A stretch of DNA of 64,000 nucleotides. Source: Macrostomum hystrix. Taxonomy: Eukaryota; Animalia; Platyhelminthes. The stretch covers positions 3,348,001-3,412,000 of the forward strand of contig CATNEN010000031.1 in the NCBI GenBank assembly GCA_950097015.1, in the 5' to 3' direction. This document shows positions 2,166-58,980 of the stretch, in pieces (position 1 is the first letter of the stretch; every line of letters begins with the position of its first letter). The position numbers and the translations under genes were made by a program. The notes under the pieces were generated by a model, which saw nothing but the letters and a program-made list of their open reading frames with translations, made no database searches and was not told the DNA's origin.

Positions 2166-2190
2166 CCAAGCTGGTACACGACAAACGCAC

Positions 2191-11925: not shown

Positions 11926-11952
11926 GTTAGGATCTCGAAGGGATTAGGATCT

Positions 11953-19643: not shown

Positions 19644-20854
19644 TGTTGCGCGCCGGTCTGCTGTCGGCAATGATTTTTTTTTTTCAGAATGGAATTCCTC
19701 CAGAATGGGATTGCTGTGAGCACGGCGCGTGAGACCCTGGCGGCTTTATTTGTCTCGGAGCGCGGCCGGAATGAGATTTTTTTAGAAAGGCGGACCGACA
19801 GTCCCTACCAGACGGCGGAGGGTCCCTAGCTTTCTAGTACGCTCTGGAGATCGATTTTATTGCCAATAAGCGACTCCCCCCCGACGGCCCAATCGTCTCG
19901 AGGCTTTATAAAATTTTCTTTTCCTCTTCCTCTTTCAGTCTTTCTTCCCCAGTGTCTGCTAGACCTGGACACTCCCTGCACCTTGGTGTGCCGAAGAAAT
20001 TGAATTTCCCGAATTGGCTATTGTATTGGCTCCTGTGAGCAGAGCTGAAAACTTTCAAACTGCCTTCCACCTACTAGTCAAGGAATTTTCGCATAGCTTT
20101 GCTATTATTCAACTAAAACTAGACAGTCAAAGCCAGTCGATAATTTTTTTGTTTCTAATGCCAAAGCAGTGACGGCGACCCCGGGACGCACCGAACAAAT
20201 TTGCCTTTATAGGTTTGGAAGATTTTTTCAACTGGAGCTTTTAGAAATCATAGAGCTTGACTGGTACAGGGGTAGTGCGGGGAGACAAGCTGATCAAATA
20301 TTGCCGGTATTCTCTCTACCTAATCTAAAGTACCAGAGGCTAAAGGCTTTAATCTTTAGCAACCGCTCTGCATTAACTTAAGTCGTAAAGCCTCGACAAT
20401 TTTCCGAGAATGGCATTGAAACAGCCCTCCAGGTCCACGTAGCGCTGGCACGGCTGTGAATCAATTACAAAACAGATGAACTGCACTTGACGCATTTTTT
20501 TATCAAATAAGGACTGAATGCATAGTGCAAGATTTTGTATTATATATAATATAAATTACTCATTCAAATTAACAATAAGCATGACGATACACAAAGATAA
20601 TAAAGTACCATCAAGTATAATAGCCGGAGATTCTAGTGGGTAAGAATGACAGATTTAATTAAGTCTACAATCCAAAATTGCCTTTATATGCTTTATATGA
20701 TGATTTATGGCCAATTTTCAAAATGCTGCCATTAATTGTTTATACTTGCATATAGAGGCCTCTATAGTTCCTTCACTGGGTTGCTCAAAATTTATTTCTC
20801 TTTACGATAAGTGAACAGCTTCAGTTGCAGCTACGTTGTATGTATGTTTCAGCT

Positions 20855-29400: not shown

Positions 29401-32400
29401 TCTCGAAGCGGACAAGGGCTTCGCCGTTGCGACGGCCGCCGGCTCGGCTTAGCACAAGGGCGACGCCACCCGGACTGACATTGAGGCCGCTGAAGAAGCT
29501 ACAGGCCACCTCGACGTCGCCCGCTTGCCAAGGCAGGCCACGCAGACGGACCACTGTCTCAGGACCGACCGGGTCCGTCTTCCGACTGACAGGTGGAACA
29601 GTGGGACTCGTTACAAAGTGACAAAGGCATTTGTGGCCGTCCTTGGAGCACACATCTTCTTGTCAAACATTTGATTACTTGTTCCAGGTTTCACTAATAA
29701 ATGAAACCATTTCCACTGAATGAATGTGGCGTAAACTTACACAAGAGCCGGGCGGTATTCCCTAGCTATCGATTCTGCTTGGTGGAACTTGTGACCTGCA
29801 ATTAAATTCAGCAAGTTTTACTAGTGAAAGGCCGATTACAAAAACGGAGAATAGACAGACAAAAACTAATAATTATTCACACCAACCATCAGCTAATAGG
29901 CAGCCAATGATTCGAGACATTGCCAGGCACTGTTCAGCGCTGAAACCTGTCAGCTGAGACTCTGCTACCTCAGACTCTACGGTCTGCTTTTGGCGCGGTT
30001 CCTGATGCAGACCGAGCTCTGTTAAATTGGATGTCAAAAATGTGCTTATCAAAGTATCCCGAACGCACTGGACCATATGAGCAGAAAATCAGAACGAAAT
30101 ACACTTTTTTGATACCACACTGAACCACATTAATGAAACCACAAAAACAGTACCAGACACCATAAACCATATCAGACCACATCAGACCACATCAGACAAC
30201 AACAGACCGCACCAGACCACACCAGACCACACTAGACCATATTAGACCACACCAGACCATATCAGACCCACACCAGACCGCACCAGACCACGCCAGACCA
30301 CACCAGACCGTATCAGACCACAACAGACCACACCAGACCACAACAGACCACAACAGACCACACCAGACCGCACCAGACCACACCAGACCACAACAGACCA
30401 CACCAGACCACGCCAGACCACACCAGACCACAACAGACCACACCAGACCACGCCAGACCACACCAGACCGTATCAGACCACAACAGACCACACCAGACCA
30501 CAACAGACCACAACAGAACGTATCAGACCTCACCAGACTACACCAGACCACAACAGACCACAACAGACCGCATCATATCAGGCAGAGGGACGGAAAACCA
30601 ACCAGCAAGCATCTCCTCCATCGTAGGCTGCGATTGCCTGCTGCGCCTAGCTCGAGCGAACTCCTTCCGCAGGTCGTGGAAGGCATAGAAATAGCCGGGC
30701 AGGCGAATCCCTTTAGCGGAGGCCTCCGGGTGCAGCAGGAGGCGCAGCGTCGCCTGGCCATCAGTGACTAGGTGGAGGTCGCGGCCGGTCTCGTCCGGGT
30801 GAGCATTAGCCAACAGTAGGGCTCGGTCAAGCTGGAAGGGCAATGCGAATACTTAGTACTTTTCCGTAAATTAGATAACCGATTTCACAAGCTTATTATC
30901 CTTTTTTGTTAAAGAATTAGAATCGAAATAGTATTGCTGGGGAATCAAATCGATAATCCATGAGAATCTAACCGATAATCCATGAGAATCTAACCGATAA
31001 TCCATGAGAATCTAACCGATAATCCACGAGAATCTAACCTATAAACCAAGTGAATCGAAACGATTTTCCAGGTGAAATCTAATCGACAAATCCATGAGAA
31101 TCTACCCGATAATCCATGAGAATCAACCCGATAATCCATGAGAATCTAACCGATAATCCACGAGAATCTATCTGATAATTCATGAGAATCTAACCGATAA
31201 TCCATGAGAATCTAACCGATAATTCATGAGAATCTAACCGATAATCCAGGTGATATCTAATCGATAATCCACGAGAATCTAACCGATAATCCATGAGAAT
31301 CTAACCGATAATCCATGAGAATCTAACCGATAATCCATGAGAATCTAACCGAAAACCTAGGTGAATCTAAGTTATAATTCCGAAATCAGAAGTTCTCACT
31401 GAAAATCAAATCCCAAAGGATTGTAAATAGTCTATGGGAATCCCAGATAGGCCCAAAAAAGTTGGCCACAGCCGCACCTCCAGCAGGCAGTCGGCCAGAG
31501 TCGCAGCCGAGTCCAACGACTCGTCCGTGATGCCGGTGGCCGCAGTGCACTCCGCTGACACCGCCGCTCTGCCGTCCTCCAACGTGGTCTCAACGACGCC
31601 TTCGAAAGCGTCAGCCCCGGCTGCTGGAAGTCCCGGCGGCAGCAGCGGCCTGACAGGATGCTGAGCCAGGGCCAGAACCTTCGAGATGTTCAATTCAAGG
31701 TTCGATTGAATGAACCTGCTTCCATAGTCAATATCGGGCCTCTTTAACAGTAGAAATACCACGCCATTTTTTTCCTCCTGGGGAAAGACCACTTCACAAT
31801 GGCTCCTAAACCGAATAATCGATTTTCGTGAAAGTCCAACATATGGATCAAAATTTTCCGCTTTTTACTATAAACTAATTTTCAAAGCATCGTCGTGATA
31901 TTCAGCTATTGTTTTAGAAGACCCTGGGGACAAGAGCAACGAACATTGCTCTTTATAAAATTCTATGGCGAATCCATGCTGGTTAGAAAATTAAAAAAAC
32001 TATTTAATCAATCCAAAAAAGTTTGCAATCATAGCCGACATGGTAGGGGGTCGGTGGCAGAGCGGTTAACGCGTTTGCCTCTCGCACCAAGGTCCCTAAG
32101 TTCGATTCCACGGCGAGGCCACATTTATTTGGGGCGCAGCCGCGGAGAGAAGGCTTTGGGGCTTGTCGTGCAATTGACGCCCTTGAGGGCCAACCTCCAA
32201 GACACAGTGAAGTGTACACTGCCTGACGATGAGAAAGTCAGGGCAGATGTACACACCTGTGTGAGCGTATGCCTGCGTACAGTATTTGTGTGCGTGTGTG
32301 CTCAGGAGTCAGCGGAATGGGCAGAATTGCCTCCTCGCTGGCTGCGGGTCTAGTGTCACTAAATGATGTGCCATTGCCCGCAGCCCTCCTGCAATTATTA

Positions 32401-33008
32401 TTAATTATTATTATTAGCCGAAATGGTTACAAGATGAAATTTTGTGAGCAGAAAATTTTTGCCTATATTTTGGTTCTTGCCGCGAGACGCTCCGACGAGA
32501 ATCGTTGAATATCTCGACTATGTCGATGTTTTGTGATCCGGGATGTTCTTTCATCGGATAGAGCGAAAAATTTTAGCACGTTTTCTGGATTTTCATGGCA
32601 GTTGGTTGAATATTTTGGGAGATGCAGAAAAAAAATTGAAATTTAAAACACCGGTCTTTCCACTGTTAATTTTACGATCATCGAGCAACAAAACCCTCAG
32701 CAAATAGCTCTCACCTTCTTTCGTTGCACATCGTAGATCAGGTAGGCAACCTGGCAAATTGGTGACTCGTCCGCCGACTCCGCCGACTGGGCCTGGCCGC
32801 AGCTGACCGCGTGCAACAGCAGCAGAAACTCCGGCTGCGGCATGTCGTCCTCAAGCTGGGATGCACTTTTCAGTTTAAGCAGTTGGCGAAGATTTCTGCT
32901 TCGAGCGGCGGCGGCAGCGGCGGCGGCCCCGCATATAAGCTCCTCTTCCGCTTCTGGCGAAGAGAAGGACAAGGCCTCGCCTGATTGGTTGGCGCAGCTG
33001 TTCTGCAT
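26430..33008 (-). CDS. ESRP (fus): Epithelial splicing regulatory protein / fusilli; join(33008..32715,31678..31478,30831..30603,30018..29887,29655..29189,28117..27695,27438..27097,26543..26430), ~733 aa
   Basis: N-terminal RNase T-like domain ([38 protein letters not shown]) and three quasi-RRMs ([10 protein letters not shown]...[11 protein letters not shown]; LRMRGLPY...[13 protein letters not shown]; LRIGGMPA...[11 protein letters not shown]). Splice phases are consistent (2202 nt). Confidence 0.93.
26572..27032. repeat. Intronic minisatellite, 24-bp unit (GATCTTGCTGCGATTCTAGCTATG), ESRP intron 7
   Basis: About 19 direct copies. Confidence 0.95.
27468..27680. repeat. Intronic minisatellite, 17-19 bp unit (AGAAATGGGATTTCTCT[AT]), ESRP intron 6
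   Basis: Fills most of the 256-nt intron. Confidence 0.92.
30150..30575. repeat. Intronic (CAGAC-CACAC/CACAA)n 5/10-bp repeat, ESRP intron 3; UGGUG/UGGUC-rich on the sense strand
   Basis: Direct copies; the reverse complement reads gtggtctggtgtggtctgttgtgg. Confidence 0.93.
30950..31370. repeat. Intronic minisatellite, 22-bp unit (GATAATCCATGAGAATCTAACC), ESRP intron 2
   Basis: Direct tandem copies with variants. Confidence 0.92.
32046..32416 (+). mobile_element. tRNA-derived SINE family A, full length (~370 bp) with (ATT)n tail, ESRP intron 1
   Basis: A-box TGGCAGAGCGG, B-box GTTCGATTCC, conserved body and ATT tail; several other copies in the window. Confidence 0.87.
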
Positions 33009-44957: not shown

Positions 44958-45239
44958 GATAATATAATAATAATTGCTGCGGGCTATGGCGTATCAGTTG
45001 GTGACAGTAGACCCGCAGCCAGCGAGGAGGCTATTCTGTTCGCTGACTCCTGAGCAGCGGGCACACACGCACACAGATACTGTACGCAGGCATACGCTCA
45101 CACGGGTATGTTCATATGCCCTGACTTTCGCATCGGTCAGGCAGTGTGCACTCTTACTGTGCCTTGGAAGTTGGCCCTCAAGGGCCTAAATTTCACGACA
45201 AGCCCACGAGCCTTCTCCTTGCGGCTGCACCCCAAATAA
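44958..45239 (-). mobile_element. SINE family A, 3' part (5' head continues at 53630-53703), split by the CACTA insertion
   Basis: Joining 45239 to 53632 restores ccccaaataaatgtggcctcgccgcggaatcgagc, as in the intact copies at 12055 and 56675. Confidence 0.9.
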
Positions 45240-45665
45240 CCCGCCTGGCCTTTTTAGTCCGGAAAACAAGAAAATAGCCCGGTGGTTGTTCCGGTGCTTC
45301 ATCCGGTACGTAATGCATTTTTCCCATTTAAAAAACCGGACGAAAACCGGAGTATAGTTAACAAAACGGACCAACGCGTGAAAATTTTGGCCTTTCGTCC
45401 GGTTGACTGTCCGGTGTTGGTCCGGAAATTCATCCAGAGTGCAGTCCGGCTTTGGCCGATAATCGGAGCAAATTCCGGACGAAAACCGGACGACCGTACC
45501 TGACAGTAAAACCGGATCAGTTTCCGGACTAGTTTCCGGATAAAATCCGGACGAATATACCTGACAGTAAAACCGGATCAGTTTCCGGACTAGTTTCCGG
45601 ATAAAATCCGGACGAATATACCTGACAGTGAAACCGGACCAGTTTCCGGGTACGTTACCGGACGA
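45240..45665. repeat. Left TIR and CCGG(A)-rich subterminal repeats, including a ~61-bp tandem duplication
   Basis: Dense tccgga/accgga motifs in both orientations. Confidence 0.9.
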
Positions 45666-45916
45666 AAGGTGCCAGAAATTTCATACTATTCTAAGCAGGT
45701 TCATACGACGCATATTTATATGCATATGAAATGTATCCGTTGTATGGAGAATAGTTGCCTCGTATTCTAAATTTTCTGGTGCTTTCAGCCTACTCACGAT
45801 GCATAAAAACTTTGAAGATATAATCGATGAGAACATCCCTGTTTCGTCATTAGCTAAGTGCAAAGTGCAAAGTGCAAAGTAGCACTCTCTGCGCACAAAA
45901 CATTTATTCTGCACGA

Positions 45917-46120
45917 TCGAAACTCTGCACGAACACAATGGAACACGATCGAAACTCTGCACGAACACACAGTCAGGGAGAGTCCAGTCAGGGACTTTAC
46001 ACAGTGCACCAACTGTGCACGAACACTATGGAACACGATCGAAACTCTGCACGAACACACAGTCAGGGAGAGTCCAGTCAGGGACTTTACACAGTGCACC
46101 AGCTGTGCACGAACACTATA
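45917..46120. repeat. 90-bp tandem duplication inside the transposon, 3' of the BEN gene
   Basis: 30-aa periodicity in ORFs 45858-46141. Confidence 0.85.
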
Positions 46121-46236
46121 TCTCAGGGCCTAAAGAGCTAGTAAAAATAAATTTGCTGCCTATACTGTCTATAATTAAAGTGAATTTGGCGAAATTGAAG
46201 CAGTTTGTCGCCTTCGTGTCCTTCGGGACGAACAGA

Positions 46237-48268
46237 CTAGGTTGCGTCCTTCTGCAGCAAGTTCGCCATGAAGTCGTCCTGCACATCCCCAAGAAGACTG
46301 CCTAGCACTTGACTGCCTCCGGCGACTGCAGCAGCTTCGGCGGCAGCCGATCCGGCGACATCAGCAGTGGCTCCAGCGGCTGCAGCAGTGGCTCCGGCGG
46401 CTGCAGCAGCTCCGGCAGCAGCCGATCCGGCGACATCAGCAGTGGCTCCGGCGGCTGCAGCAGCTCCGGCGGCAGCCGATCCGGCGACGTTACTGGCTCT
46501 GGCGGATCTGGAAGGCTTCTGCGTCGACGACTGCTTCGGACGCGGGGCTGCCTTGTCGCAATTCTTTGATCGCACGTGCTTCGGTAGACCCAGGCGCTGC
46601 CGGGCAGTTTCACCGCAGCGCGTAAATGCCCGACGCAGCTGGCGGTCGTTGAAAGCCACATTGCTGCTGCGCAGCCACTCTTTAGCGGCTGCCAGCTTAC
46701 CAGGATTCGCGGGCGTAGACACAGCCGGGCGTCTTGCGCCCGGAGATGGTTGAGTGGGCCAACTCCTGCTCCGTAAAGAGGGCCCTGAACAGGGCTCTTA
46801 GTACGGCCAATTTGGCGAAATGGCCATTATCACTTTGCGGTGCATCGATATCGACGGATGGCTTCGAGGCTTCGCGGAAGTCCTCGAGCCGCTGGTCTAG
46901 CTGAATTCGCGACGAGGATGACACCTTGACAAAGTTTTGTGAATCCGACAGGCTGACGAGACAGGCGTCTGTGTTGGATGAATGTCCTGCATCGGTATGC
47001 GAGCTGGCCTTGTGGCAGGCAGCCACCAAAGCTCGCGTCTGCGAAGCGGACAGGGTACCGTGGGCCATAAATTCGGATTCTAAATTCGATTCGTCGCCGG
47101 TGTTCGCGCTGTCGTCTTCGTCCGCGTCCTGCTGTGACCTGGACACTGAAGCATTGTTTTTGCAGCCGGCTGCGAGAATCTGCGAGGCGCTGACCAAATG
47201 CGAGTTGGCGTTAGCTGCCGTTCGCTGCAGTGCAACGCATTTGGCCTCCGCAGCCTCAACTTGTCGCAGCAGTTTGGCCTCCATTTTCGACGAAACCGTG
47301 ATTTTTTGCTCCAGATCTCGACAAGCCTCCTTCAGGTGAGCGGCCTCGGCGCGTGTCTTCCGGAGTTGAGTGCCTAAATGAAATCATATGACGTACTTTG
47401 TCTGAAGAACGTAAGTTAAGCACTTTGAATTCGCACAGCCTGTACCTGCATAACCTAGCTGCATCTCGATCTGCAGCCTTCTTCCCTGTTTCTCCCCGTT
47501 AGTCCCCAAAGTCTTACCCAGAGTTTCTGAAAGCGACGCGGCCCTTTGCAGCTCGAGCTGCAGTCCCCTACAGGACTGGCAGGAGCGTGGCAGCTCAACG
47601 GGCTGCGAGTGGACGTTTGTTAATTTGGCTGCTCCCATAGCTGCAGCTTTGTCTTCGAAAGGTCCTCGCACGAGTGTGCCCCGGTAACGCCGAGCCGATT
47701 TGCGGTTTGTTTTAGCGGTGACGATGAGTACGACGCTGCCGAGTTCAACTGGGACGGGGGAATCGCGCTTACGAGCCACGATGAGTGGCGTTGAAGTGGC
47801 CCCGTCGGTACCCACGACCTCCGTACGTTCGTGGTAATTCTCATACTGGAAAAGAAAATAGCGAGCTCGGTTCTCCGCCTTGTACGGTTCCATGTCTACC
47901 ATGCAGGGTGCCACGTCAAACGAGGGGTTTAAATTCTCTTCGTCCCCGATCTCATCGTCACGGGCAGTTCCATTGCCTGAAGTCCCTGGTCTGTCACCCG
48001 CATTCGCAAGATGAGCTCGATCAGAAATTAGCATTACGCGCTTCTTCGTTGGAGGAGGTGGCGGGGGAGGGGGTTCAGACACGACCGATGACCGTGCGGC
48101 ATCGTCTGTTGGCACCGCTCCCGTCAGCTCCGAAGTGCCTGGTTTGCGCTTCTCAGGTTTGCGCTTCTCAGGTTTGCGCTTCGCTTCTGAGATCTCAGAA
48201 CGACGTTTTCGGTGTTTGCTCTGTTCTGCTTCTTTCATTTCTTTCAATACTTTTCTGTCGCGCCCCAT
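46237..48268 (-). CDS. Transposon accessory gene: basic NLS-like region + beta-rich domain + coiled coil + C-terminal BEN domain; join(48268..47455,47373..46237) with one frameshift at ~46723, ~650 aa if restored
   Basis: In-phase intron (LQIEMQL-GTQLRKTRAEAAHLKEACRDLEQK). BEN-like LFRALFTEQELAHSTISG...NPGKLAAAKEWL...RQLRRAFTRC. A 2-bp loss in a TG run shifts the frame. Confidence 0.72.
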
Positions 48269-48611
48269 TTTTCAGCGCTGATAGATCTGAAGGAGGGGAA
48301 ATGAATTATCATATTGTTTTGCTCAAAGTGGCGTCTCCGAGAAATGAGTATCCTTGTGAAAGGATGAAGGTTTTAAATGGAGGTAAGTCTGAAAGACCGA
48401 AAGCCTTAATCCCGAGATCAAGCCGTTAAACTGGTTCGGAGGTGAAATATATTTAGTCTCGTAGATGTTCACCTTAGTCTGCAACTAAAAGCGCCGATTG
48501 TCAACCAACAAATAAATTCATTTAAGTGATCACTTCGTCGAAACTTCGTGATATTTTTAAAGTGATATTTTCGAACATATTGATATATCAATCCATATAT
48601 GGAAGACAGAT

Positions 48612-49448
48612 TCAGGTTTTCGGGCTGCGATGCTGCAAATCTCGCAGCGGCCGTCTGCGTCGGCGCAGTGGCCGCATGGCCTCGATGGGTGCATCCGGTG
48701 GGGTGGGGGGCATGTCTATTGCCCAGAACTGGGCGTCGTGATTCAGCTTCGGCTGGTTGCTTCTATGTCTGCCCGCCAGCTGCAGACGCTTTCTACGGCT
48801 GTCGGGTGACATACCTGCATACCAGCCTTCACACTCCGGGCAGCAATGGGCCTCCAGTTCCATTCGGTCGGCTTGTCGGCGGCAGACGTACACGCTCGCT
48901 GGACCGGCGGCCTTCTTCTCTGGAAGCCGGTTGTAGTCAGCTTTCATTTCTGCCGCTGACTTTCCAAAGAAAAGGCCACCTGGTCGGCCGACGAACACAA
49001 GGTCTCCAGCAGCAGCTCCGGCGGCAGCCGATCCGGCGACATCAGCAGGGGCTCCGGTGACTGCAGCAGCTCCGGCGGCATCAGCAGGGGCTCCAATGGC
49101 AGCATCAGACGGAACGTTGTCTGAGCCGTCGTCTAAATGCAGGGGTCCGGACCATTGGCCAGTGGATGCCGCCAATGGACGCCGGGGCGTCACGCTTTCG
49201 GCCTGATGCTGCAGATTCGGCCATGCGCCTGACATTACCTGCGTTGATGGTAGCTCGTCTGAAGCGCAAAGTGCTCGGTGGTATCGCAAAGCCAAACTGG
49301 AGTGAAAAACAGGCGACGTCGGTCGACTCTGGCTGCCTTCGCGAAGCCGGTGCAGCTCGGCCCGCAGCATCTTGTTGTCTTCAGATAACGCGGTACAGAC
49401 TGGGCAACTAGCGGCGTGCGTCCAGTGGTCCTTTGTGGCTGGCGTGGA
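48612..49448 (-). CDS. Transposon-borne CtIP/Sae2 (SAE2 C-terminal domain)-like protein, at least 278 aa; short first exon upstream not fixed
   Basis: CRRQADRMELEAHCCPECEGWYAGMSPDSRRKRLQLAGRHRSNQPKLNHDAQFWAIDMPPT aligns without gaps to the CtIP C-terminus as I recall it ([61 protein letters not shown]). N-terminal CPVC plus short coiled coil after acceptor ttttcag. Confidence 0.85.
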   Translation of the reverse strand, partial: STPATKDHWTHAASCPVCTALSEDNKMLRAELHRLREGSQSRPTSPVFHSSLALRYHRALCASDELPSTQVMSGAWPNLQHQAESVTPRRPLAASTGQWSGPLHLDDGSDNVPSDAAIGAPADAAGAAAVTGAPADVAGSAAAGAAAGDLVFVGRPGGLFFGKSAAEMKADYNRLPEKKAAGPASVYVCRRQADRMELEAHCCPECEGWYAGMSPDSRRKRLQLAGRHRSNQPKLNHDAQFWAIDMPPTPPDAPIEAMRPLRRRRRPLRDLQHRSPKT

Positions 49449-49984
49449 CTGAAAATAGAAGGTCTTCTATATAGAGCCGAAGTATATTTTCTACACACGT
49501 CAGAGTATTGATGTGAGACGTGAGCTCAACATTTTCTGGGAATTTGAGTTTGATTAGGGTGTGGATTCTGGTGGCAACGTATGGAATGGATTATGCGACA
49601 CGGGAAGAACCGTCCATGGCCATGAATCGAAGTTGTAATAGTTTCAAATCGAGGAGCGCAGTTTATTTTGTTTTAGTACTACGTACACACGACATCCAGC
49701 AAATGAAGTAATTACAGACAGCCAACATGATGATTATAAAAAATAACATTACCGCTACATGGGAAAACGTGACTAATAATTGGGCATAATTAAGCATCCT
49801 CTTAATTCGTGCTGCAGTGTAAAAAAGTTAGTTTAAAGCAACAGAAAACTGTATCCAGACAGCGATATAACAGGAAATGTGAATCGGGAGACTCTTGACG
49901 CATTGGGCTTCAATGTCTACTGAGAGCGGTGCTAGGGAAGTGTGTATGAGCAGGGAGCGTGCTATGAGAAGAAAGGAAACAGAG

Positions 49985-52733
49985 TCAGTGGTAATTGAGC
50001 TGCGAATAGGGTAGCAGCGCGATTTTACCAGCCGTCAATACACACGATCCGACAATATCACGCACAGGCACACGGGATGCGTTCCAGGTTGTCGCAGGGC
50101 CGAACGGATTGCCCAGAAGCCGGCGCACGTGAGCGAAGCGACAACCGCGCTCTTCTGTCGTCGCACGCACACGACACAGCGACTCTAGTGGTTCGAAATA
50201 GTCGTCTTCTACGGGGAGTATGTCGACCGTCATCTCCACGTCCTCACCGTCGACATTGATAGCAGCCACACGTGCAAATGCGAACGATGTCTGGTCAAAC
50301 TGTCGTTTAATGGCTACAAAGCTGCTGCACGATCGTCTGCACTTCTCGTTGTCCGCATCCAATTCTGGATTGAAGACTTCGACCTCGAAGCCGGACTGCA
50401 GTGTGGCTGTCTGCCAGCCATCGACCATATGTTTAGGTCGCTTCAGAACAACATTGCCGCAGACGATTGACTCTGTGAGCATCGCACGCATCTGGCCACC
50501 GAGTTCTGCATTGTCGCCAAAAGTAGAGGCCTGCGCCTGAATGGCAGCAAACTCGCGTTCAATTGCGCCGACCAATTCGATGTCTGTCCGGCGGGTCCCA
50601 TGCAGTTGGTCTCTCAGTCGAACGTGCATTGACTCAAAGAGACCAGCCGACAGCCTGTGCAGTGGCCCGGCGAGCAACACGGAGGGCAGCATATGGCAAC
50701 AAACTTGATGCGCATTGTAAGTCAGGGCTCTTAGAGAGTACAACCGCGGCAAGTTGGCATGGAAATGCCTGAGAGACGTCTCCACGTGACGCAGCTCGGA
50801 CTTCGGCGCGCTATCAAGGCACATCCAGAAGACGGCAGAGGACAGGATCAGCAGGTGCCAATAGTGTTCGTCGGGTAGAAACTCCTCGAGAACTAAAGGT
50901 GCGTTGGCCAGAATGTAGATAGCCAGTTCGTGACCCCGAAGGTGCCGGACGTCAGTCAGTCCTCGGACATTATGGCGCTGAACACAGCGGGGCACTCGAA
51001 TGAGATCCATTCTCGTCTTAATGACCCTTATGCGAGCATGCAAATCGGGACAATTAGTCGGACCCTTGTCTGGTTTTTCAGCGCGCACAAGGAATAGTTG
51101 AAATAGCATGTAGCGCACAAGACCAGAGCAGAGTTGATGAAGAAAACATGGCGGGGTTCCCCGTATGATGTCGAAACCGTACAAGCGAGTAAGTGGCGAA
51201 CATCCGCGCACGCCCAATGTATCGGTTAGAAACGTGCGTCCTTGCTGAGCATGATACTCAGCCAAATGCTGGGTGTCATGCGCCGAGCGTACTACCGTCT
51301 GTTCACAGCCTAGGCGACGCGCATCATTCTGCATAGCAGGCGTGATGTCAACGTCGTAGACGCGACCAGAGCGGGATGGGTGCAGAGCTGTTCGAATATA
51401 GCATTTGTCGCAGCCATACGTTGCGGAGAAACGTCTCAGACTCAGAGCGTCGGCACGCGCGGGTGCGTCAAACATAGCAATTAGTGTGTGTACACGTAGA
51501 CGCCGTCGAACGTTGTGGCTGTCGATGAACTGGATGCCATCAATACGAAGAGCATTTAACTTATCCACCACGATCGGCATAAACGCCGCAGGATGTAGCT
51601 TCTTCTTTGAGACATAGGCGGCTACCTTCATCACAAACCGCAGTTTAAATGGATCTGCTATTTCGTTTATGCTAAGATAGACAGGGTAGACCTCAGTGCA
51701 GCTGGTCGTACGCAAGGGAAAGCCGTCTCCACAGATCATTCCAGAGAGATCGCTGCGACTTCCCGGGTCTATGCCCTCAACAAAGACCTTATACAGTTCG
51801 CTGTTCACCATGTGGATTGTTTCGGTACTGACTTGCTGGTCAATAGGAAAGGTGGCATGCTCCAACAACTGGCGGTGCAATACCAGTGTCCGTAGCTGTC
51901 TCTGGACGTCGAAGTCCCAGAAGTTGCCGATGTTTACCGATCCACATTGGGGGCACTGATCCCGTTCGGAGTCGCATTGTTGGCCAGGAAAATTCGAGTG
52001 ACAGTCGTTGCACACTGTCGAGCACCTCGAACTGTGCATAACTGACTGCGCCGATGAAATGGCTTCGCGGGCTGCTCGACCACCTTTGGGCAACGCGTTT
52101 CCGGGAACCAAACGGTGCAGCAGACGCAAAATTCTGGTCACGCCACCACGGGATACTTTCAGGTCGGTGGCGCATGACAGGATCTCGCTAAGCGCCTCTC
52201 CAACGGTTCGTGGCAGTGCGGGATGCCAGGGACGCAGCAACTTGACATCGAGTGCATGTTCATCTTCGTGAGCAGCGTCGTCGCCTTCAAAGAGAAGAAA
52301 TGTTGGTAGCGATTTTGTGCCTCATCGTATTCTGTCACAGAGTGCTAATAATGGCCTGTTGTTACGTTGGTATACCACACTTACCAGCTTCACCGTCATC
52401 GGATTCGGAGTCGCCCTCCTCGGAGGTCTCGCTGCGCTTGTTAGCGTCGGCGTCATCGTCAGTGTCAGCGGGGCTGACATCAGAGTCGCCCTCGTCGGAG
52501 GTATCGCTGTGCCTGTCAGCGTCAGCGGGGCTGGCATCAGAGTCGCCCTCGTCGGAGGTATCGCTGTGCCTGTCAGCGTCAGCGGGGCTGGCATCAGAGT
52601 CGCCCTCGTCGGATGTCCTCCTACGCCCGTCACATAGAGGAGAGCGTGAGCATCTGTTAAGGCGAGCCTGAACGCGCTTGCGGTTCATGTACCTGCGCAT
52701 GTAGAGGCGAGGATGTAGGGACGAGTCTTCCAT
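49985..52733 (-). CDS. CACTA/EnSpm DDE transposase (Transposase_21-like); join(52733..52385,52284..49985), 882 aa, uninterrupted
   Basis: D1 in ICGDGFP..YPVYLSINEI; D2 in MFDAPARA...GCDKC; H-x4-H in YNAHQVCCH; E in SAGLFESM. N-terminal Cys cluster CNDC...CPQC. GT-AG phase-1 intron. Confidence 0.93.
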
Positions 52734-53129
52734 TGCCTTTTTATTTCTTTTACGAGTCTTCCATTGCCTTTTTATTTCTTTTACTCCGGCAGCTGATTTC
52801 TTGGTATACGCTGAAACATGTTATTATACATAGATTTCTAAGACGGAATACTAGACTTGTAAAAATTTGTAATGCTCTAAGCTGTACCCTTAGGTTGGTA
52901 CCCTGAAACCTTTTTATCTGTTCATACCCATGTCTTTATAGCCACAATTTGGAGATTAAGCGTATATCTAGGTGACTGAGAAAGGAAGCGAATAATACGA
53001 ATTTTTGCTAGTCACTGTGATTACAGAGACTATAGTGATGAAATTTTTCACAGCGTTTAAATTTATTTGTGATTAAATTTATGACAGCCATTACAGTGAT
53101 TACATTTTGTGACACTGATGAGGCGGATG

Positions 53130-53629
53130 GTTTTACCGGACAGGAATTAGACGCATCTAAAATGTAGTCCTTTAGCCATAGTTATATTTGGCTGTTCACC
53201 ACGGACATCAGTTTGTGATTAAATCATTCTGCTGTACAGCATTGCTTAACAGGGATTACTGCCGCTCTTTGTCCGGTTCCCGCTCCTGCTTTTATCCGGT
53301 TGAGTGCGTACGAATCACCGGAAGAGAAAGCGGACCACTTTCCGGGCAAAATTCGATCTTCATCCGGAGTTAATCCGGATCTGAGCCCGGTTCTTGTACG
53401 TTTTTTGGACAGACAAGCAACCGGAAAAAAATTCGGATGAAAACCGGACTAAAATCACTAACATTAGGCCACTTTATCCGGTTTTGGTCCGTAAAGTGGT
53501 CCGCTTATTTGCCGGATACTTAAAACCGGAGCGAAACCGGACGAAATTCTGGTTCATCCGGAAATACCCCCCAAAACGGATTATTCCGGACCAAATCCGG
53601 ATGAAATCCGGACCAAAAAGCCAGGCGGG
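53130..53629. repeat. Right CCGG(A)-rich subterminal repeats and TIR
   Basis: Dense tccgga/accgga motifs ending in ccaaaaagccaggcggg. Confidence 0.9.
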
Positions 53630-53723
53630 AAATGTGGCCTCGCCGCGGAATCGAGCTCAGCAACCTCGGTGCGAGAGGCATACGCGTCAACCGCTGTGCC
53701 ACCCAACCCCTAACACCCTCCAG

Positions 53724-56408
53724 CGTGCAGAACCGGCGAGGCCAAGGTGACCAAAGGCTACCGCCTGCCAGCCCGTTTCGTCATTCACACTGTCGGGCCG
53801 CGCTACAACGCCAAATACCGCACTGCGGCTGAGAGCGCATTGTACAACAGCACCCGGGCTGTGCTGGAACAGGTGCTAGAGTGCGGCGTTGACACGCTGG
53901 GCTTCTCGCCGATTCACACCAGCAAGCGCGGCTACCCGCCGGAGGAGGGCGCCCACCTCACCCTCCGCTGCCTTCGCCGCTTCCTGGAGCGCCACGGTCA
54001 CGGCCTCAGCCGGCTGGTCGTGTCCACCGGCGGTCCGAATGGCGCCTGCTATGCGGAGCTGGCCGCTCTGTACTTTCCCCGCTCTAATGCCGAATTGTGC
54101 AAATCGCAGGCTGCTCTGGCTGGGACCAGCCTGGGCGGCCCGATGGGCGAGCCAGTGCACAAGGGTAGGGGCATTCGCATCGCCGCTAACCCGCTGGGCG
54201 AGCAATGGTAGGTTGACTGTCCCCGCTACAGACTGACTACTTATAGTCGAGCGCAAGACATTTTATTTGTTTTCTGAGGGTTGGCCCTCATAGGCATAAA
54301 CTGCACGACAAGCCCCGTGTCTTCTCTTCGCAAATGCGCCCCAAGATCTGATAAATTTTTTTGAGATTTTAGTTGCTCAGATGGGGATCTGAGTGGGCTG
54401 TTTGGGATTCTAGTTGTCAATCTGGGATCTGAGTGGACTGTTTAGGATTTTAGTTGTCAATCTGGGATCTGAGTGGGCTGTTTGGGATTCTAGTTGTCAA
54501 TCTGGGATCTGAGTGGACTGTTTAGGATTTTAGTTGTCAATCTGGGATCTGAGTGGACTGTTTAGGATTTTAGTTGTCAATCTGGGATCTGAGTGGGCTG
54601 TTTGGGATTCTAGTTGTCAATCTGGGATCTGAGTGGACTGTTTAGGATTTTAGTTGTCAATCTGGGATCTGAGTGGACTGTTTAGGATTTTAGTTGTCAA
54701 TCTGGGATCTGAGTGGGCTGTTTGGGATTCTAGTTGTCAATCTGGGATCTGAGTGGACTGTTTGGGATTTTAGTTGTCAATCTGGGAATCTGAGTCGGCT
54801 GTTCGGGATTCTAGTTTTCTGGTGGAAGAACATGATTCAAAAAGCGCTCCTTTTTACCACAGTGACAGCTCCCGCGAGTCTAGCCCGTCGCCGCCGCCCT
54901 CCGACGCAATCGGCGGGCCCGACGACGACTCCGCCCCGGTGGCAGCCGTGGCCGCAACCGCATTTTTCGACCCGGAATTTCGCGGTAGTCAGCGGGACTC
55001 CTCGCTATCTGTGTCCGGCGTTGGCTCGCACGCCTTCGCCCGCATGGAGCAGCACCCGGATAGCGACGCCAGTAGGCGGAAGAAGCGCCAGATTGGCGCC
55101 GATGCGCGCCAACCTACTGACGTAATTCGCGCTGATCGCCTATTGGCTTGCGAGCGCCGCTACGATCGCTGGCTGCAGCGGGCCAGGTGAGAGTCCGCAT
55201 GATTGCATCAGCTAGTCACAATTCCCTATCCTGTAACCATGATTCAGATTTCTCCCTGATCAGGATTCGATCTCCAGACCACTGGTGCTATTATTCCACA
55301 GGCAGCAGATCCGCAGTTCAGCAGAGAATCTCAGCCGACTGCACGCAGCTCGCTGCCTATTCCACAGCGGCCACGACATCCACGGCAGGCCAGTGATAGT
55401 GGCCATCGGCTCCCGGATGCCGCCGCAGTCAGAGCGCAACTACGAAGACCTGGCTCTGCTGGTCTTGGGCGTACTCGAGCCGTTGATCAGCCAGCCCTAT
55501 GTGGTGCTGTACGCCCACTGCGGCTACGATGCGCTGCCGCATACCGCCTTTCTTAAGGTCAGAAACTCATTTCAAACAGCACCATCGGATCCGTAGCTTA
55601 ACAACTGAAATCCCAAACATCCCAGTAAGATCCGTAGCTTAACAACTGAAATCCCAAACAGCACCATCGGATCCGTAGCTTAACAACTGAAATCCCAAAC
55701 AGCACCATCGGATCCGTAGCTTAACAACTAAAATCCCAAACAACACCATCGGATCCGTAGCTTAACAACTGAAATCCCAAACATCCCAGTAAGATCCGTA
55801 GCTTAACAACTGAAATCCCAAACATCCCAGTAAGATCCGTAGCTTAACAACTGAAATCCCAAACATCCCAGTAAGATCCGTAGCTTAACAACTGAAATCC
55901 CAAAAAGCCCTCTCAGATCCCTAGTTTAACAACTGAAATCCCAAAAGGCCCTCTCAGATCCCTAGTTTAACAACTGAAATCCCAAAAAGCCCTCTCAGAT
56001 CCCTAGTTTAACAACTAAAATCCCAAAGAGCCCTCTTATATCCCCAAATTGACAACTGCGATCCCAAACAACCCGCGCCAGAACTGTACAATTATTTTAT
56101 ACGAAAGTGTGTACACAAATCTTCTTCAAGTGCTTCAGTGAGTTTGTATAAAAACCTGAGAATAAAAGTCCCAACCAATGAAGGAGCTTCGCGACCTGCT
56201 CACTGGCGAGCCGCGCTGGGGGGCCAACCTGGCCTGCCTCATCCATCTGCACGCAGACCGGCGAACTCGCCTTTTTTGGTGGTGGTTCGCCAGGTTCACG
56301 GCGGCCGGCCTCAACCAGCAATTCGCCGACTGCCTGCAGGACATCTTCCATCTGGTTGGGCCGGACCAGCTGGACTTGCCCGACTCCGTGTACGAGCTCG
56401 ACCGGCGG
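53724..56408 (+). CDS. GDAP2: GDAP2 exons 3-6: 53724..54207, 54863..55186, ~55302..55557, 56184..56408 (possible last exon from 57545)
   Basis: CRTGEAKVTKGYRLPARFVIHTVGPRYNAKYRTAAESALY...RGYPPEEGAH (macro domain); SHAFARME; CRAL-TRIO-like GHDIHGRPVIV...PYVVLYAH and PDQLDLPDSVYELD. Confidence 0.92.
54360..54815. repeat. Minisatellite, 40-bp unit (alternating A/B variants), GDAP2 intron 3
   Basis: tctgggatctgagtggactgtttaggattttagttgtcaa x ~11. Confidence 0.95.
55575..56065. repeat. Minisatellite, 41-bp unit, GDAP2 intron 5; reverse-complement relative of the intron 3 array
   Basis: aacaactgaaatcccaaa(a/c)agccctctcagatcc versus reverse complement of the intron 3 unit gacaactagaatcccaaacagcccactcagatcc. 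Confidence 0.92.
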
Positions 56409-56409
56409 G

Positions 56410-56760
56410 TAATAATAATAATAATGATAATAATTGCAGCAGGGCTGTAGGCAATGGTACATAACATCATTTTGTGACAGTAGACCCGCACCCAGCGAGG
56501 AGGCAATTCTGCCCATTTCGCTGACTCCTGAGCACACACAGATACTGTACGCATGCACGCATACGCTCACGCATTTCTCATCGTCAGGCAGTGTACACTC
56601 TGTGCCTTGGAAGTTTGCCCTTTAAGGGCGTAAATTTTACGACATGCCCACGAGCCTTCTCACCGCGGCTGCGCCCCAAATGAATGTGGCCTCGCCGCGG
56701 AATCGAGCTCAGGGACCTCGGGGCGAGAGGCAAACGCGTTAGACTGCTCTGCCACTCACC
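56410..56760 (-). mobile_element. SINE family A, full length
   Basis: Same head, body and (ATT)n tail as the 32046 copy. Confidence 0.87.
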
Positions 56761-58980
56761 CTGCTTAGGTTGTAGCCTAGGGGGTTGAAGCCAGTGGTTA
56801 GTGCATCAAACATACGACTTAAAGTTCGGTGGTTCTATTTCCGGAGCCAGTCAGTTTTTATTTTTAATGCATTACATTTTTAGGTTGCCAAGGAGACTAA
56901 AAGCGTCGGGCCTGTTGGAAAATTGTCGAATGCTGGGCCGGACGATCGCAGTTCAGCTCCAGATGAAGCCCTTTAAACTTTTACCAGTGACTCAGTGCTG
57001 ATTTGAAATCGATACTTAAGTAGGCCACAGAATTCAGACTTGTTTTTTACGTTTAATTTGCATAATTGCATATAAGTACTCCAGCCAGCCTTGATCTTGA
57101 GCCTTGATCTCCCTGTGATTAAATTTCCACTATTCAGTTATTCTTTGTAATAGCATACATTTATTGTTCTTTTTAAAACAAATTTAAAGATAATTTTGTT
57201 CCGGCATTCCACTGTTGGCTTTTTATTCGCTGAAAACGTAATTCTTTAATTCGGCAGTATATTGAACTCTTATGCATGCTCGCGTGTGACTTTCATTTTA
57301 TAAGAAAATCTAGATTTATATTTTTATTTTAAGCGCACTTCAAAATGAAATACAAGTACTTCAAATAGACTAAGACATATAGATTTTTTAGTTCATTAGA
57401 ACATACATAAACCAAAAATTATTTACTCGCTAAACTGGACTACTTAGTTTAAGTATACAAAAACATGTTTTATTTTGTACTGTTGCATGTAACTGCACCA
57501 AATCTTAGCAATACAAGCTGTTAATACTTTTTTACGTTTTTCAGGCCAATCGCGATTATAGAGGTGCTATGGATTCCATACTTTATATGATGAAAATTTC
57601 CCAGACATATTGCTAAACAACAAAACATTAAAGCCACTTGCTATCAAGAATGTGTTGAACAATATGTGATACAAATATTCATCACCTACAATTTGGTAGT
57701 TTCGAATTGAAACTTTCGCAGAGAAACAATTACATCTGATGTCGTGTTTGATAGCATGTATAATAACAACGTGATGCGATTTTGACGGTGTAATTAAGGG
57801 ATTTTTTTTTCTTACAAAAAGTTTTTTTACAGTTATTCTTCACGCATAATTCCTTTTCCGGGATAAAGCACAGAAACATAATACAAAAGACTTAATGCGT
57901 CATAAATTCAGAGATACGAGTACTTCCCAGAACCTGCGTAGGGCTGCGCTGCTCACACTTAGGCGAGGCGAAGGCAAAAGCATCGCGCACATTCGTAAAT
58001 ATGACTTAAGGCACGGCTTCTGACCAGCACAATATAATGTCAATACAGTGTACTATTTAAAAAGTTCATTTTTCCGAATTTTTGTCGCAGCATACTGACC
58101 AGTTAGCATCATTTTGATATGGTATGTCTAATAGTATATTTTTTAGAAAACACTGACTCGTCAATTGCAGTCTCCAGTCGGAAAACAAATGCGATTGTAG
58201 ATACGAAATGTATGCTTAAAATGTAGAGTAATAAAGTTTTTTTAAGTCTTCTTTAAAAGTAAATGAAAACTATGATTCTTGAATAGGCTTATAAGCATTA
58301 ATTACTTGAATTGAATAAACAGTGCACAAACGTATTTGGTAAAAAAAATACTGTAGTTAAAGGAGCTAGATTTGATTGTGTGCTTGTATTTAAAATAAAA
58401 AGATTTTTTGTGAGAAAAAATACATGTAGGCCCTATACTAAGCCGAGCTCTTATTGCTTTTTGGAACTTGGTTTTATACTGACGTTTTATCTTGGAAAGT
58501 TAACAACTTAAAAATATAAGAAATAAGAATACGGCACGCAATTTTATAATACACACTAACAGCGTTTAAGAAGCATGTGTAACCAATAAGCATTGGTTAT
58601 GTATTAATAGATTGTTTAAGCCTTTTAGTCAGTATATTAACTTACTTTAAGAAATTAAAGTGAAAACGAATATCTAAAAATGGAAGTTCTAAGGTCGTTT
58701 TAAGGTGGCAACAGCTAGTGCTTTCTCATGTCATGAGTCTCGTGGTCATGACATTAGTAGGCCTACCAAAGAAGCACCACATTTCTAACACTGGTACACT
58801 TCCCCTTCTCCTTTTAATTGCTCCTATAATCCCATAATAGCCCCTCCCCTAGCTCTTGAATGGTTCCCTAATTACGCACTGCAATATTTTAATTAAGGCC
58901 TAGCCTAGGCCCCTATCTGAAATAAAATGTAAATCAACAAGTTAGGCCTAAGACAAAATAGGCTTAGACAATTTGTAATA

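What the first reader, a model, noticed from the sequence alone, without database searches (positions are those of the whole stretch)
45240..53629. Complete three-gene CACTA element with exact ends, TSD and a reconstructable empty site
Seen: CCC-initiated TIRs (10 bp perfect, ~23 bp imperfect), AA duplication, CCGG-rich subterminal arrays at both ends, and an uninterrupted 882-aa transposase with D-D-E, C-x2-C and H-x4-H motifs. Three genes run in tandem on one strand (transposase, CtIP-like, BEN). Known: animal CACTA elements such as Schistosoma SmTRC1 have CCC ends and 2-bp TSDs, and plant En/Spm use TnpD plus TnpA. Inference: a young, possibly still mobilisable family with an unusual catalytic + repair cofactor + DNA-binding architecture.
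Basis: partly seen in the sequence, partly recalled or inferred. Interest (0 to 1): 0.85.

Follow-up and report, generated by a model that had tools for sequence, protein, structure and literature searches.

The report
Young three-gene CACTA-type transposon copy
This is a recently inserted cut-and-paste transposon with exact ends, and besides its cutting enzyme it carries a gene copied from the tail of the DNA-break-processing factor CtIP and a DNA-binding-type gene that is broken by a two-letter deletion in this copy.

Summary
Window 45240-53629 is one 8,390-bp DNA transposon. It has CCC...GGG ends, a 10-bp perfect inverted repeat (about 23 bp if imperfect) and CCGG-rich subterminal arrays of about 50 per kb. 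The 2-bp AA target duplication is confirmed: three uninterrupted copies of the host repeat in the same window align without gaps to the rebuilt empty site.

All three genes lie on the minus strand.
- **Transposase:** 882 aa, intact only after removing a 100-nt intron. It carries the D, D, C-x2-C, H-x4-H, E signature of CACTA/Mirage/Chapaev-type enzymes.
- **CtIP-like gene:** 252 aa, with a real CtIP/Sae2 C-terminal domain.
- **Third gene:** 629 aa in intact copies, with a BEN-like fold. Here a 2-nt deletion truncates it to 475 aa.

A 5,850-nt contig from another organism label carries all three genes in the same order at 99.8% identity. Distant relatives (a marine metagenome contig and Macrostomum lignano) keep transposase plus BEN-like gene but lack the CtIP gene. 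So that gene is a lineage-specific acquisition, not a nested insertion.

What the CtIP tail does for the element is untested. The missing CDK site is shared with the likely host CtIP of M. lignano.

This scan has already noted the same family on other DNA of this genome, in 17 notes.

The parts
45238..45239 (.). Target-site duplication AA, left copy
   Evidence: Paralogous empty sites show exactly 2 duplicated bases.
45240..45263 (+). Terminal inverted repeat, at the 3' end of the element in gene orientation. It starts CCCGCCTGGC.
45259..45662 (.). Subterminal array of 23 CCGG-core motifs (mostly TCCGG/CCGGA). It includes a 61-nt tandem repeat at 45473-45649.
   Evidence: The same motif type lies at both ends of the relative L001.
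45921..46119 (.). 90-nt tandem repeat (2.2 copies, 97%) in the untranslated part downstream of gene 3. An AATAAA on the minus strand lies just downstream of it, at 45908-45903, outside these coordinates.
46237..47373 (-). Gene 3, exon 2: coiled coil, BEN-like domain and an Ala/Gly-rich repeat tail. A 2-nt deletion at 46718/46719 shifts the frame in this copy, which then stops at 46699-46697 (475 aa). Intact copies encode 629 aa.
   Evidence: Frame switch against the intact L001 homologue. X2 and X3 contigs carry +AC after 46718 and C>T at 46722, which restores one frame.
47374..47517 (-). Gene 3 intron, 144 nt, GTAAGA..TTTAG, phase 1
   Evidence: Sequence reading. It removes the single in-frame stop and joins coiled-coil segments that match L001 and L002. 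It is not confirmed by RNA.
47518..48268 (-). Gene 3, exon 1: basic/Pro-rich N-terminus, then a conserved domain of about 100 aa (YWVVQY...LKGPFE...C-x-S-C) of unknown fold.
   Evidence: Homologous to L001 ORF242 (E 8e-14) and to the N-terminus of the M. lignano gene.
48612..49370 (-). Gene 2: 252-aa ORF. Its last ~100 residues are a CtIP/Sae2 C-terminal domain, with C-x2-C, RHR and FW kept and no S/T-P site before FW. An acceptor-like site at 49449/49448 could extend the reading frame.
   Evidence: Pfam SAE2 scores 20.6 bits against a cutoff of 19.8. 34 HMMER hits all fall on CtIP tails, the best at 4e-23. Alignment A2. Atlas. RNA-library contigs.
49467..49473 (-). TATATAG upstream of gene 2, a possible promoter element
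   Evidence: Sequence only. The RNA-library contig ends at 49453.
49985..52284 (-). Transposase exon 2, with the catalytic core and the stop codon. An AATAAA lies downstream at 49667-49662.
   Evidence: Homologues P0001 (43% identity) and P0002 (33% identity) are.
52285..52384 (-). Transposase intron, 100 nt, GTAAGT..AG, phase 1
   Evidence: It is not confirmed by RNA.
52385..52733 (-). Transposase exon 1: acidic N-terminus with a 57-nt tandem repeat (52458-52613).
52721..52784 (-). Perfect 31-nt tandem duplication that copies the transposase start codon. It creates a 4-codon upstream ORF.
53273..53612 (.). Subterminal array of 17 CCGG-core motifs
53607..53629 (-). Terminal inverted repeat, at the 5' end of the element in gene orientation
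53630..53631 (.). Target-site duplication AA, right copy

Best explanation
**What it is (shown).** This is an 8,390-bp cut-and-paste DNA transposon of the CACTA/EnSpm-Mirage-Chapaev (CMC) kind, in the animal group with CCC ends and 2-bp duplications. It inserted into a host short repeat and duplicated AA. It encodes three proteins on the minus strand.

- **Transposase (882 aa).** It has an acidic tail, a Cys-rich stretch and a D-D-[C-x2-C]-[H-x4-H]-E catalytic core.
- **CtIP-like protein (252 aa).** Its C-terminal ~100 residues are a CtIP/Sae2 domain.
- **Third protein (629 aa in intact copies).** It has a conserved N-terminal domain, a coiled coil and a BEN-like domain. In this copy a 2-nt deletion truncates it.

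**Evolution (shown).** Transposase plus BEN-like gene is the conserved core of the clade. The CtIP gene is a later acquisition of the lineage in this genome, and it travels with the element.

**Mechanism (inferred).**
- The transposase cuts at the CCC ends.
- The BEN-like protein binds the TCCGG/CCGGA subterminal repeats and brings the two ends together, as TnpA does for En/Spm.
- The CtIP tail engages the host Mre11-Rad50 complex at the breaks or hairpins left by excision and steers their processing. My odds for this are about 0.45, against about 0.3 for a functionless passenger and about 0.15 for a blocker of host CtIP.
- This copy needs gene-3 protein from a sister copy in order to move.
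For: - **Ends, duplication, empty site:**
- **Subterminal arrays:**. The same CCGG-type arrays and CCCGC ends occur in the 43%-identical relative L001.
- **Gene models:**
- **Catalytic signature:** invariant in three homologues. It matches the CMC definition in PMC12730594.
- **Transposase neighbours:** Atlas nearest clusters carry PF02992 at score 0.98.
- **CCC ends with 2-bp duplication in animal CACTA relatives:** PMC1636069.
- **CtIP tail:**
- **BEN-like domain:**. UniProt names the M. lignano homologues BEN proteins.
- **Conserved core:** transposase + BEN-like gene in L001, in L002 and at 2 or more M. lignano loci.
- **Colinear three-gene copy:** 99.8% identity in run X2, which also has an intact gene 3.
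- **RNA-library contigs over all three genes:**
- **Background for the mechanism:** phosphorylated Sae2/CtIP activates the Mre11 endonuclease through Rad50 (PMC11662671). Ac/Ds excision leaves hairpins, and no revertants were recovered without Mre11 or Sae2 (PMC3299998).
Against: - Pfam Transposase_21 reaches only E 0.16, 11.6 bits against a cutoff of 28.6. The structure model of the transposase failed at pLDDT 34.
- Pfam BEN never hit. The BEN fold matches are weak: Foldseek E 0.26-0.7 and VIA Z 7.6.
- No binding, cutting or repair activity was tested.
- The RNA evidence comes from wastewater metatranscriptome contigs that show no splice joint, so DNA carry-over is not excluded.
- Substitutions among copies are too few to show selection on gene 2: 2 synonymous and 2 non-synonymous.
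- The relative L001 shows no matching duplication, with AT against CC at its ends.
- Hairpin formation by CMC transposases is assumed from their kinship with Transib/RAG1. It is not shown.
- The laid stretch did not include the ends, so end-to-end co-occurrence in a second copy is not proven.
Confidence: 0.72

Rival explanations
1. The CtIP-like gene is a passenger. It would be a host exon picked up by the element, as CACTA and Mutator elements often do, still intact only because the family is young, and with no role in transposition.
For: - It is absent from the two distant relatives that keep the other two genes.
- Homology covers only the last ~100 residues, which are one exon in the M. lignano gene.
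- The N-terminal part is low-complexity and shares a 72-nt repeat with the gene-3 tail.
- Copies differ by only about 0.2%, so an intact ORF proves little.
- Substitutions are 2 synonymous to 2 non-synonymous.
Against: - The ORF has its own start, a TATA-like element and RNA-library contigs.
- All invariant CtIP-tail residues are kept, although the nearest known relative is only 52% identical.
- The gene is present in copies from three organism labels.
- Earlier notes of this scan report it in many copies (unchecked).
Confidence: 0.3
2. The CtIP tail works against the host pathway. Lacking the tetramerising N-terminus and the CDK site, it would occupy Rad50 without activating Mre11. That would damp resection, so excision sites are closed by end joining, or so that a host response is blunted.
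For: - No significant N-terminal CtIP similarity.
- The S/T-P site before FW is replaced by H-D. Phosphorylation of that site is needed for Rad50 binding and Mre11 activation (PMC11662671).
Against: The likely host CtIP of M. lignano (P0003/P0037) also lacks the S/T-P site, so in this lineage the site may not be needed. The second conserved Thr is kept. There is no direct test.
Confidence: 0.15
3. The middle segment is an independent nested insertion, and the three-gene layout is peculiar to this copy.
For: The CtIP gene is missing in L001 and L002.
Against: - One 5,850-nt contig from run X2 (another organism label) spans 46660-52507 with all three genes and only 10 substitutions and 2 gaps.
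- No inverted repeats or duplication flank 48270-49985.
- Scan notes report the same order elsewhere in the genome (unchecked).
Confidence: 0.03

Closest known systems
Animal CACTA-related 'TRC' elements (SmTRC1 of Schistosoma mansoni, and the Tribolium and Aedes elements; DeMarco et al. 2006, PMC1636069)
   Same: CCC at the first three bases of the inverted repeats. A 2-bp target duplication shown by paralogous empty sites. A transposase of the tnp2/Transposase_21 kind. More than one protein product. Internal tandem repeats.
   Different: The SmTRC1 transposase has a recognised Transposase_21 domain, whereas this one scores below threshold. SmTRC1 is 4.7 kb with 54-bp repeats. No CtIP-like or BEN-like gene is reported for it.
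Maize En/Spm (CACTA) with TnpD and TnpA
   Same: A catalytic protein plus a second protein. Dense short subterminal repeats at both ends, which TnpA binds in En/Spm. Size of about 8.3 kb.
   Different: En/Spm ends are CACTA with a 3-bp duplication. TnpA and TnpD come from one alternatively spliced transcript. No sequence relation between TnpA and gene 3 was found or tested. En/Spm has no third gene.
CtIP / Sae2 / Ctp1 (Pfam PF08573)
   Same: The C-terminal domain carries the invariant C-x2-C, RHR and FW and the second conserved Thr. The nearest relatives are small flatworm-type CtIPs (P0003/P0037 of M. lignano, P0004).
   Different: It is only 252 aa. No N-terminal tetramerisation region was detected. 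The CDK S/T-P site is replaced by H-D. It is encoded inside a transposon and is multi-copy.
Fungal DNA transposons carrying TET/JBP dioxygenase genes (Kojima 2025, PMC12730594)
   Same: Transposons of several superfamilies, including EnSpm-type, that carry an extra host-derived enzyme or cofactor gene thought to help the element.
   Different: The cargo and its presumed role differ: demethylation there, break processing here. The hosts are fungi, not animals.
BEN-domain DNA-binding proteins (Insensitive, Bsg25A, BEND6, NACC1)
   Same: The best fold matches of the gene-3 C-terminal domain. These proteins bind short, often palindromic, DNA motifs, as TCCGGA is.
   Different: No Pfam BEN match. 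Sequence identity is 12-16%. Here the domain is combined with an N-terminal domain of unknown fold and a coiled coil.

Membership tests
CMC (CACTA/EnSpm-Mirage-Chapaev) transposons | [quoted passage not shown] | tested here: met
   D186, D272, C291-x2-C294, H525-x4-H530 and E550 are invariant in the window protein, P0001 and P0002. The definition was read.
CMC (CACTA/EnSpm-Mirage-Chapaev) transposons | Recognisable Transposase_21 / tnp2 domain (PF02992) | tested here: inconclusive
   Pfam gives E 0.16, 11.6 bits against a cutoff of 28.6, in the right region. The whole protein gave no hit. Atlas nearest clusters carry PF02992 at score 0.98 with 221/256 shared features. The structure model failed.
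CMC (CACTA/EnSpm-Mirage-Chapaev) transposons | Short target duplication, 2-5 bp in the wider clade | tested here: met
   Exactly 2 bp, from three paralogous empty sites.
CMC (CACTA/EnSpm-Mirage-Chapaev) transposons | Termini 5'-CACTA or 5'-CAC..GTG-3' (plant CACTA, Chapaev) | tested here: not met
   The termini are CCCGCC...GGCGGG.
Animal CCC-ended CACTA relatives (TRC group) | CCC as the first three bases of the inverted repeat, with a 2-bp duplication | tested here: met
   The features are as described in PMC1636069.
CtIP/Sae2 family | SAE2/CtIP C-terminal domain (PF08573) with C-x2-C, RHR and FW | tested here: met
   Pfam scores 20.6 bits against a cutoff of 19.8. There are 34 HMMER hits, all to CtIP tails, most of which carry PF08573.
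CtIP/Sae2 family | CDK phospho-site (human T847 / yeast S267, S/T-P four residues before FW) | tested here: not met
   The window has LNHDAQFW where orthologues have STPEHFW. P0003 of M. lignano also lacks the site. The role of the site is from PMC11662671.
CtIP/Sae2 family | N-terminal coiled-coil tetramerisation region | tested here: not met
   No Pfam CtIP_N hit. BLASTP of the N-terminal part against P0004 and P0037 is not significant. Only a short motif resemblance by eye remains.
CtIP/Sae2 family | [quoted passage not shown] | not testable with these tools
   Needs biochemistry.
BEN domain proteins | Match to the BEN profile (PF10523) | tested here: not met
   No hit in the window pieces, L001 ORF255, or P0041/P0042, even at E 10.
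BEN domain proteins | All-helical BEN fold | tested here: inconclusive
   The AF2 model of L001 ORF255 has a confident core. The Foldseek hits with the highest probability are NACC1 (several chains), Bsg25A, BEND6 and Insv BEN structures (probability 0.82-0.87, E 0.26-0.7, TM 0.47-0.57). VIA gives Z 7.6 over 100 of 113 residues of the NACC1 BEN domain. Atlas gives 0.88. UniProt names the M. lignano homologues BEN proteins.
piggyBac | TTAA target duplication with CCC..GGG ends and a piggyBac-type transposase | tested here: not met
   The duplication is AA and the target is AAATAAATG. The transposase neighbours are tnp2-type.

The most novel reading that the evidence does not exclude
A cut-and-paste transposon has recruited the Rad50-binding tail of CtIP as its own cofactor, free of cell-cycle control. 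With it the element would direct Mre11-Rad50 to the hairpins or ends that its transposase leaves. That would decide whether the donor site is resected and copied back from the sister, which gains a copy, or simply rejoined. It would be the first transposon-encoded DNA end-resection factor.
Probability: 0.35. Interest if true: 0.85.

Novelty: new variant of a known kind. Interest (0 to 1): 0.6.

Why it matters
Cut-and-paste transposons are thought to depend wholly on host break repair. An element that carries a piece of the host's own resection switch would show that transposons can tune repair-pathway choice themselves. It would also give a natural minimal CtIP tail for studying Mre11-Rad50 activation.

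This copy is useful as a reference. Its ends, duplication, empty site and gene models are exact. Its sister copies differ by about 0.2%, which suggests that the family may still move. That makes transposition assays and tests for presence or absence between individuals realistic.

The conserved transposase + BEN-like pair also gives a candidate protein for reading the CCGG subterminal repeats in an animal CACTA-type clade.

Tried and rejected
- **Transposase structure.** The AlphaFold model from a 3-sequence alignment was unusable (pLDDT 34). No fold search was run on it.
- **Transposase homologue searches.** Word-indexed searches with the protein and with its alignment found only two relatives. 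A phylogenetic placement inside CMC was therefore not possible.
- **Pfam BEN.** No hit for any gene-3 homologue.
- **Solved structures.** The sequence search for the CtIP-like protein found nothing.
- **piggyBac reading of the CCC ends.** Rejected, because there is no TTAA.
- **Nested-insertion reading of the middle gene.** Rejected on the X2 contig.
- **Gene 2 as a duplicate of the gene-3 N-terminus.** Rejected: BLASTP is not significant. Only a 72-nt Ala/Gly-rich repeat is shared.
- **'Mini-CtIP' N-terminus.** A C-x2-C plus an EDNKxL motif upstream of the ATG resembles CtIP by eye, but BLASTP does not support it.
- **Other copies in the window.** Self-comparison and the end-pattern search found none.
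- **Literature.** Searches for a transposon-borne CtIP/Sae2 or BEN gene found no such report. This is a negative result in an open-access library only.
- **Presence/absence test.** It could not be run. The element is longer than the 6,000 letters allowed for read laying, and only one call was available.


Full report
**1. Ends and insertion site**

The stretch 45240-53629 begins with CCCGCCTGGC and ends with its exact reverse complement. A 15-nt degenerate version of this end occurs only at these two places in the 64-kb window. None of 100 shuffles gave two matches. The repeat extends to 24 nt on one side and 23 nt on the other, with one indel and one mismatch.

Both flanks belong to one short host repeat. 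Three uninterrupted copies of that repeat lie in the same window: 32041-32408 in reverse, 56466-56761 and 11951-12134. In each, the last two bases matched by the left flank are also the first two matched by the right flank. Left flank plus right flank minus one AA aligns to all three copies without a gap, across ...CCCCAAATAAATGTGGCC.... So the 2-bp AA duplication and the empty site are confirmed directly, by the paralogous-empty-site method used for SmTRC1 and Chapaev.

CCGG-core motifs, mostly TCCGG/CCGGA, reach 52 and 46 per kb in the roughly 400 bp inside each end. The interior has 4.6 per kb and the rest of the window about 2 per kb. A 61-nt tandem repeat makes up part of the left array.

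**2. Genes**

All three genes are on the minus strand.

*Transposase.* The ATG is at 52733. Exon 1 runs to 52385. A 100-nt intron (GTAAGT...AG, phase 1) spans 52384-52285. Exon 2 runs to the stop at 49987-49985. The spliced product is 882 aa with no stop. The longest open frame is 778 codons.

*Gene 2.* The ATG is at 49370 and the stop ends at 48612, giving 252 aa.

*Gene 3.* The ATG is at 48268. Exon 1 runs to 47518. A 144-nt intron (GTAAGA...TTTAG, phase 1) removes the only in-frame stop. Exon 2 runs from 47373. Near 46720 the frame changes from ...SGRKTPG to STPANPGKL..., whereas the homologue in L001 is continuous.

Contigs of runs X2 and X3 carry two extra bases (AC after 46718) and C>T at 46722. 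That puts both halves in one frame, reading ...SGRKTPGYVSTPANPGKL.... Intact copies therefore encode 629 aa. This copy stops after 475 aa, in the middle of the C-terminal domain. A contig of run X6, which has the same organism label as the best DNA holder X1, shares the deletion. An assembly slip is therefore unlikely.

AATAAA signals on the minus strand follow the transposase (49667) and gene 3 (45908). None lies between gene 2 and gene 3.

**3. What the transposase is**

Pfam gives no hit for the whole protein. The core gives only E 0.16 to Transposase_21. The language-model Atlas places the protein next to clusters that carry PF02992, with score 0.98 and 221 of 256 features shared.

Only two homologues were found. 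P0001 is 43% identical and lies on a marine metagenome contig (L001). P0002 is 33% identical and comes from Macrostomum lignano (L002). In the alignment of the three, DGF, DAPxRA, GCDKC, AHxVxxH and FE(S/A)xH are invariant. That gives the order D, D, C-x2-C, H-x4-H, E. Kojima 2025 gives this order as the shared signature of EnSpm, Mirage, Chapaev and Transib (PMC12730594).

CCC ends with a 2-bp duplication are what DeMarco et al. found for SmTRC1 and for Tribolium and Aedes elements (PMC1636069). I file the element under CMC, in the CCC-ended animal group. Two notes apply. The Pfam domain test was inconclusive, and the CACTA/CAC terminus of the plant and Chapaev groups is not met.

**4. The conserved core and the add-on**

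L001 holds a whole element at 97-10043. It has a 33-nt inverted repeat that starts CCCGC, and TCCGG/CCGGA arrays at both ends. Downstream of its transposase are two ORFs homologous to the two exons of gene 3, with E 8e-14 and 2e-6.

In M. lignano the transposase is followed by a single 469-codon ORF with the same N-terminal domain, coiled coil and C-terminal domain. Neighbouring protein accessions show the pair at two or more loci.

Neither relative has a CtIP-like ORF or motif between the two genes. Transposase plus gene 3 is therefore the old core, and gene 2 was added in the lineage found here.

Within that lineage the three genes travel together. One 5,850-nt contig of run X2, from a different organism label, covers 46660-52507 with 10 substitutions and 2 gaps. 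One reservation remains: the laid stretch did not reach the ends.

**5. The CtIP-like gene**

- **Pfam.** SAE2 scores 20.6 bits against a cutoff of 19.8.
- **Exhaustive HMMER search.** It gave 34 hits. All fall on residues ~140-246 and all lie at the C-terminal ends of the targets. Eight of the ten best hits scanned carry PF08573.
- **Conserved residues.** C-x2-C, RHR and FW are invariant in the alignment, and the second conserved Thr is kept.
- **CDK site.** The S/T-P four residues before FW is replaced by H-D. Phosphorylation of that site drives Rad50 binding and Mre11 activation (PMC11662671).
- **Nearest relatives.** These are P0003/P0037 of M. lignano (52% identity, E 4e-23) and P0004 from a metagenome. 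P0037 has an N-terminal coiled coil, is low-copy, and lies between ordinary host genes with no transposase within 10 kb. It is most likely that species' own CtIP. It too lacks the S/T-P site, so the loss may be a trait of the lineage rather than an invention of the transposon.
- **N-terminal half of gene 2.** It shows no significant similarity to CtIP or to gene 3. It does share a 72-nt Ala/Gly-rich repeat with the tail of gene 3.

**6. The BEN-like gene**

Pfam BEN never matched. Three lines of weaker evidence point to BEN.

- **Fold.** The model of the intact L001 protein has a confident helical core. Its highest-probability Foldseek matches are BEN-domain chains of NACC1, Bsg25A, BEND6 and Insensitive. 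The E-values are weak. VIA-align gives Z 7.6 over 100 of 113 residues of the NACC1 BEN domain, and this is the only domain-level match outside the coiled coil.
- **Atlas.** The nearest clusters are BEN, at score 0.88.
- **Source name.** UniProt names the M. lignano homologues BEN domain-containing proteins.

I call the domain BEN-like, probable. It is conserved together with TCCGG/CCGGA arrays in two elements whose transposases are only 43% identical. That makes gene 3 the best candidate for the protein that reads those repeats, but this is inference.

**7. Age and activity**

- Copies in three organism labels differ from this one by about 0.2%.
- The duplication is perfect, and the transposase and gene 2 are intact.
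- Contigs from four wastewater metatranscriptome runs cover parts of all three genes and fall to zero in the transposase-gene 2 spacer.
- None of those contigs shows a splice joint, and DNA carry-over cannot be excluded.
- Among the listed differences, the transposase has 6 synonymous and 6 non-synonymous changes, gene 2 has 2 and 2, and gene 3 has 1 and 3. The transposase figures hint at constraint. The others are too few to read.

**8. Mechanism and rivals**

The following are shown:
- a real transposition event;
- a CMC-type catalytic signature;
- a conserved partner gene;
- a true CtIP tail carried by the element.

The following are inferred:
- gene 3 binds the subterminal repeats, as TnpA does in En/Spm;
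- the CtIP tail contacts Rad50 and affects how excision breaks are processed.

Two points of background support the second inference. Excision by hAT elements leaves hairpins, and no revertants were recovered in yeast lacking Mre11 or Sae2 (PMC3299998). CMC enzymes share motifs with Transib/RAG1.

My odds are: helper of break processing about 0.45, passenger about 0.3, competitor of host CtIP about 0.15.

**9. Prior knowledge**

I found no paper that reports a transposon-borne CtIP/Sae2 gene. Within this scan the family has been noted repeatedly on other pieces of the same genome. Several follow-ups call the host a Macrostomum-type flatworm. I treated those notes as leads only.

This report adds:
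- the exact ends and the paralogous empty sites;
- the gene models;
- the 2-nt deletion in gene 3;
- the transposase + BEN-like core in distant relatives;
- the point that the missing CDK site is shared with the likely host gene.

Noticed in passing
window 44959-45239 + 53630-53715; also 32041-32408, 56466-56761, 11951-12134, and a fragment at 54280-54344: A short interspersed host repeat occurs in at least four copies that are 74-87% alike. It is the target of the insertion. Its right part looks tRNA-related by eye, but ARAGORN calls no tRNA in the window.
   Followed up: partly
window 52721-52784: A perfect 31-nt tandem duplication copies the transposase start codon. It creates a 4-codon upstream ORF (MEDS-stop) just before the real start. 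Whether other copies have it is unknown, because it lay outside the stretch on which reads were laid.
   Followed up: no
window 49009-49080 and 46403-46474: A 72-nt Ala/Gly-rich coding repeat is shared at 94% identity between gene 2 and the tail of gene 3. It also caused a back-joining contig in run X3.
   Followed up: partly
window 49449/49448 and about 48291: Strong AG acceptor-like sites lie shortly upstream of genes 2 and 3. The first is in phase 0 with the CtIP frame. This could mean spliced-leader trans-splicing of a shared transcript. It is untested.
   Followed up: no
window 48531-48606 and 48141-48155: Copy-to-copy length differences. Run X3 has a 76-nt deletion in the spacer between gene 2 and gene 3. 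An RNA-library contig of X4 lacks one 15-nt unit of the KRKPE-coding repeat, in frame.
   Followed up: no
L002 about 12900-14800 (M. lignano): The M. lignano relative has a 240-codon open frame between its transposase and its BEN-like gene. The frame has no CtIP motif and could be a different accessory gene.
   Followed up: no
L001 95-96 and 10044-10045: The complete relative on the marine metagenome contig has no matching 2-bp duplication (AT against CC). The cause could be mutation, a misassembly or a different insertion history.
   Followed up: no
window 18732-19670 (minus strand): A 312-aa single-exon ORF with four EF-hand calcium-binding motifs (Pfam E 5e-34).
   Followed up: no
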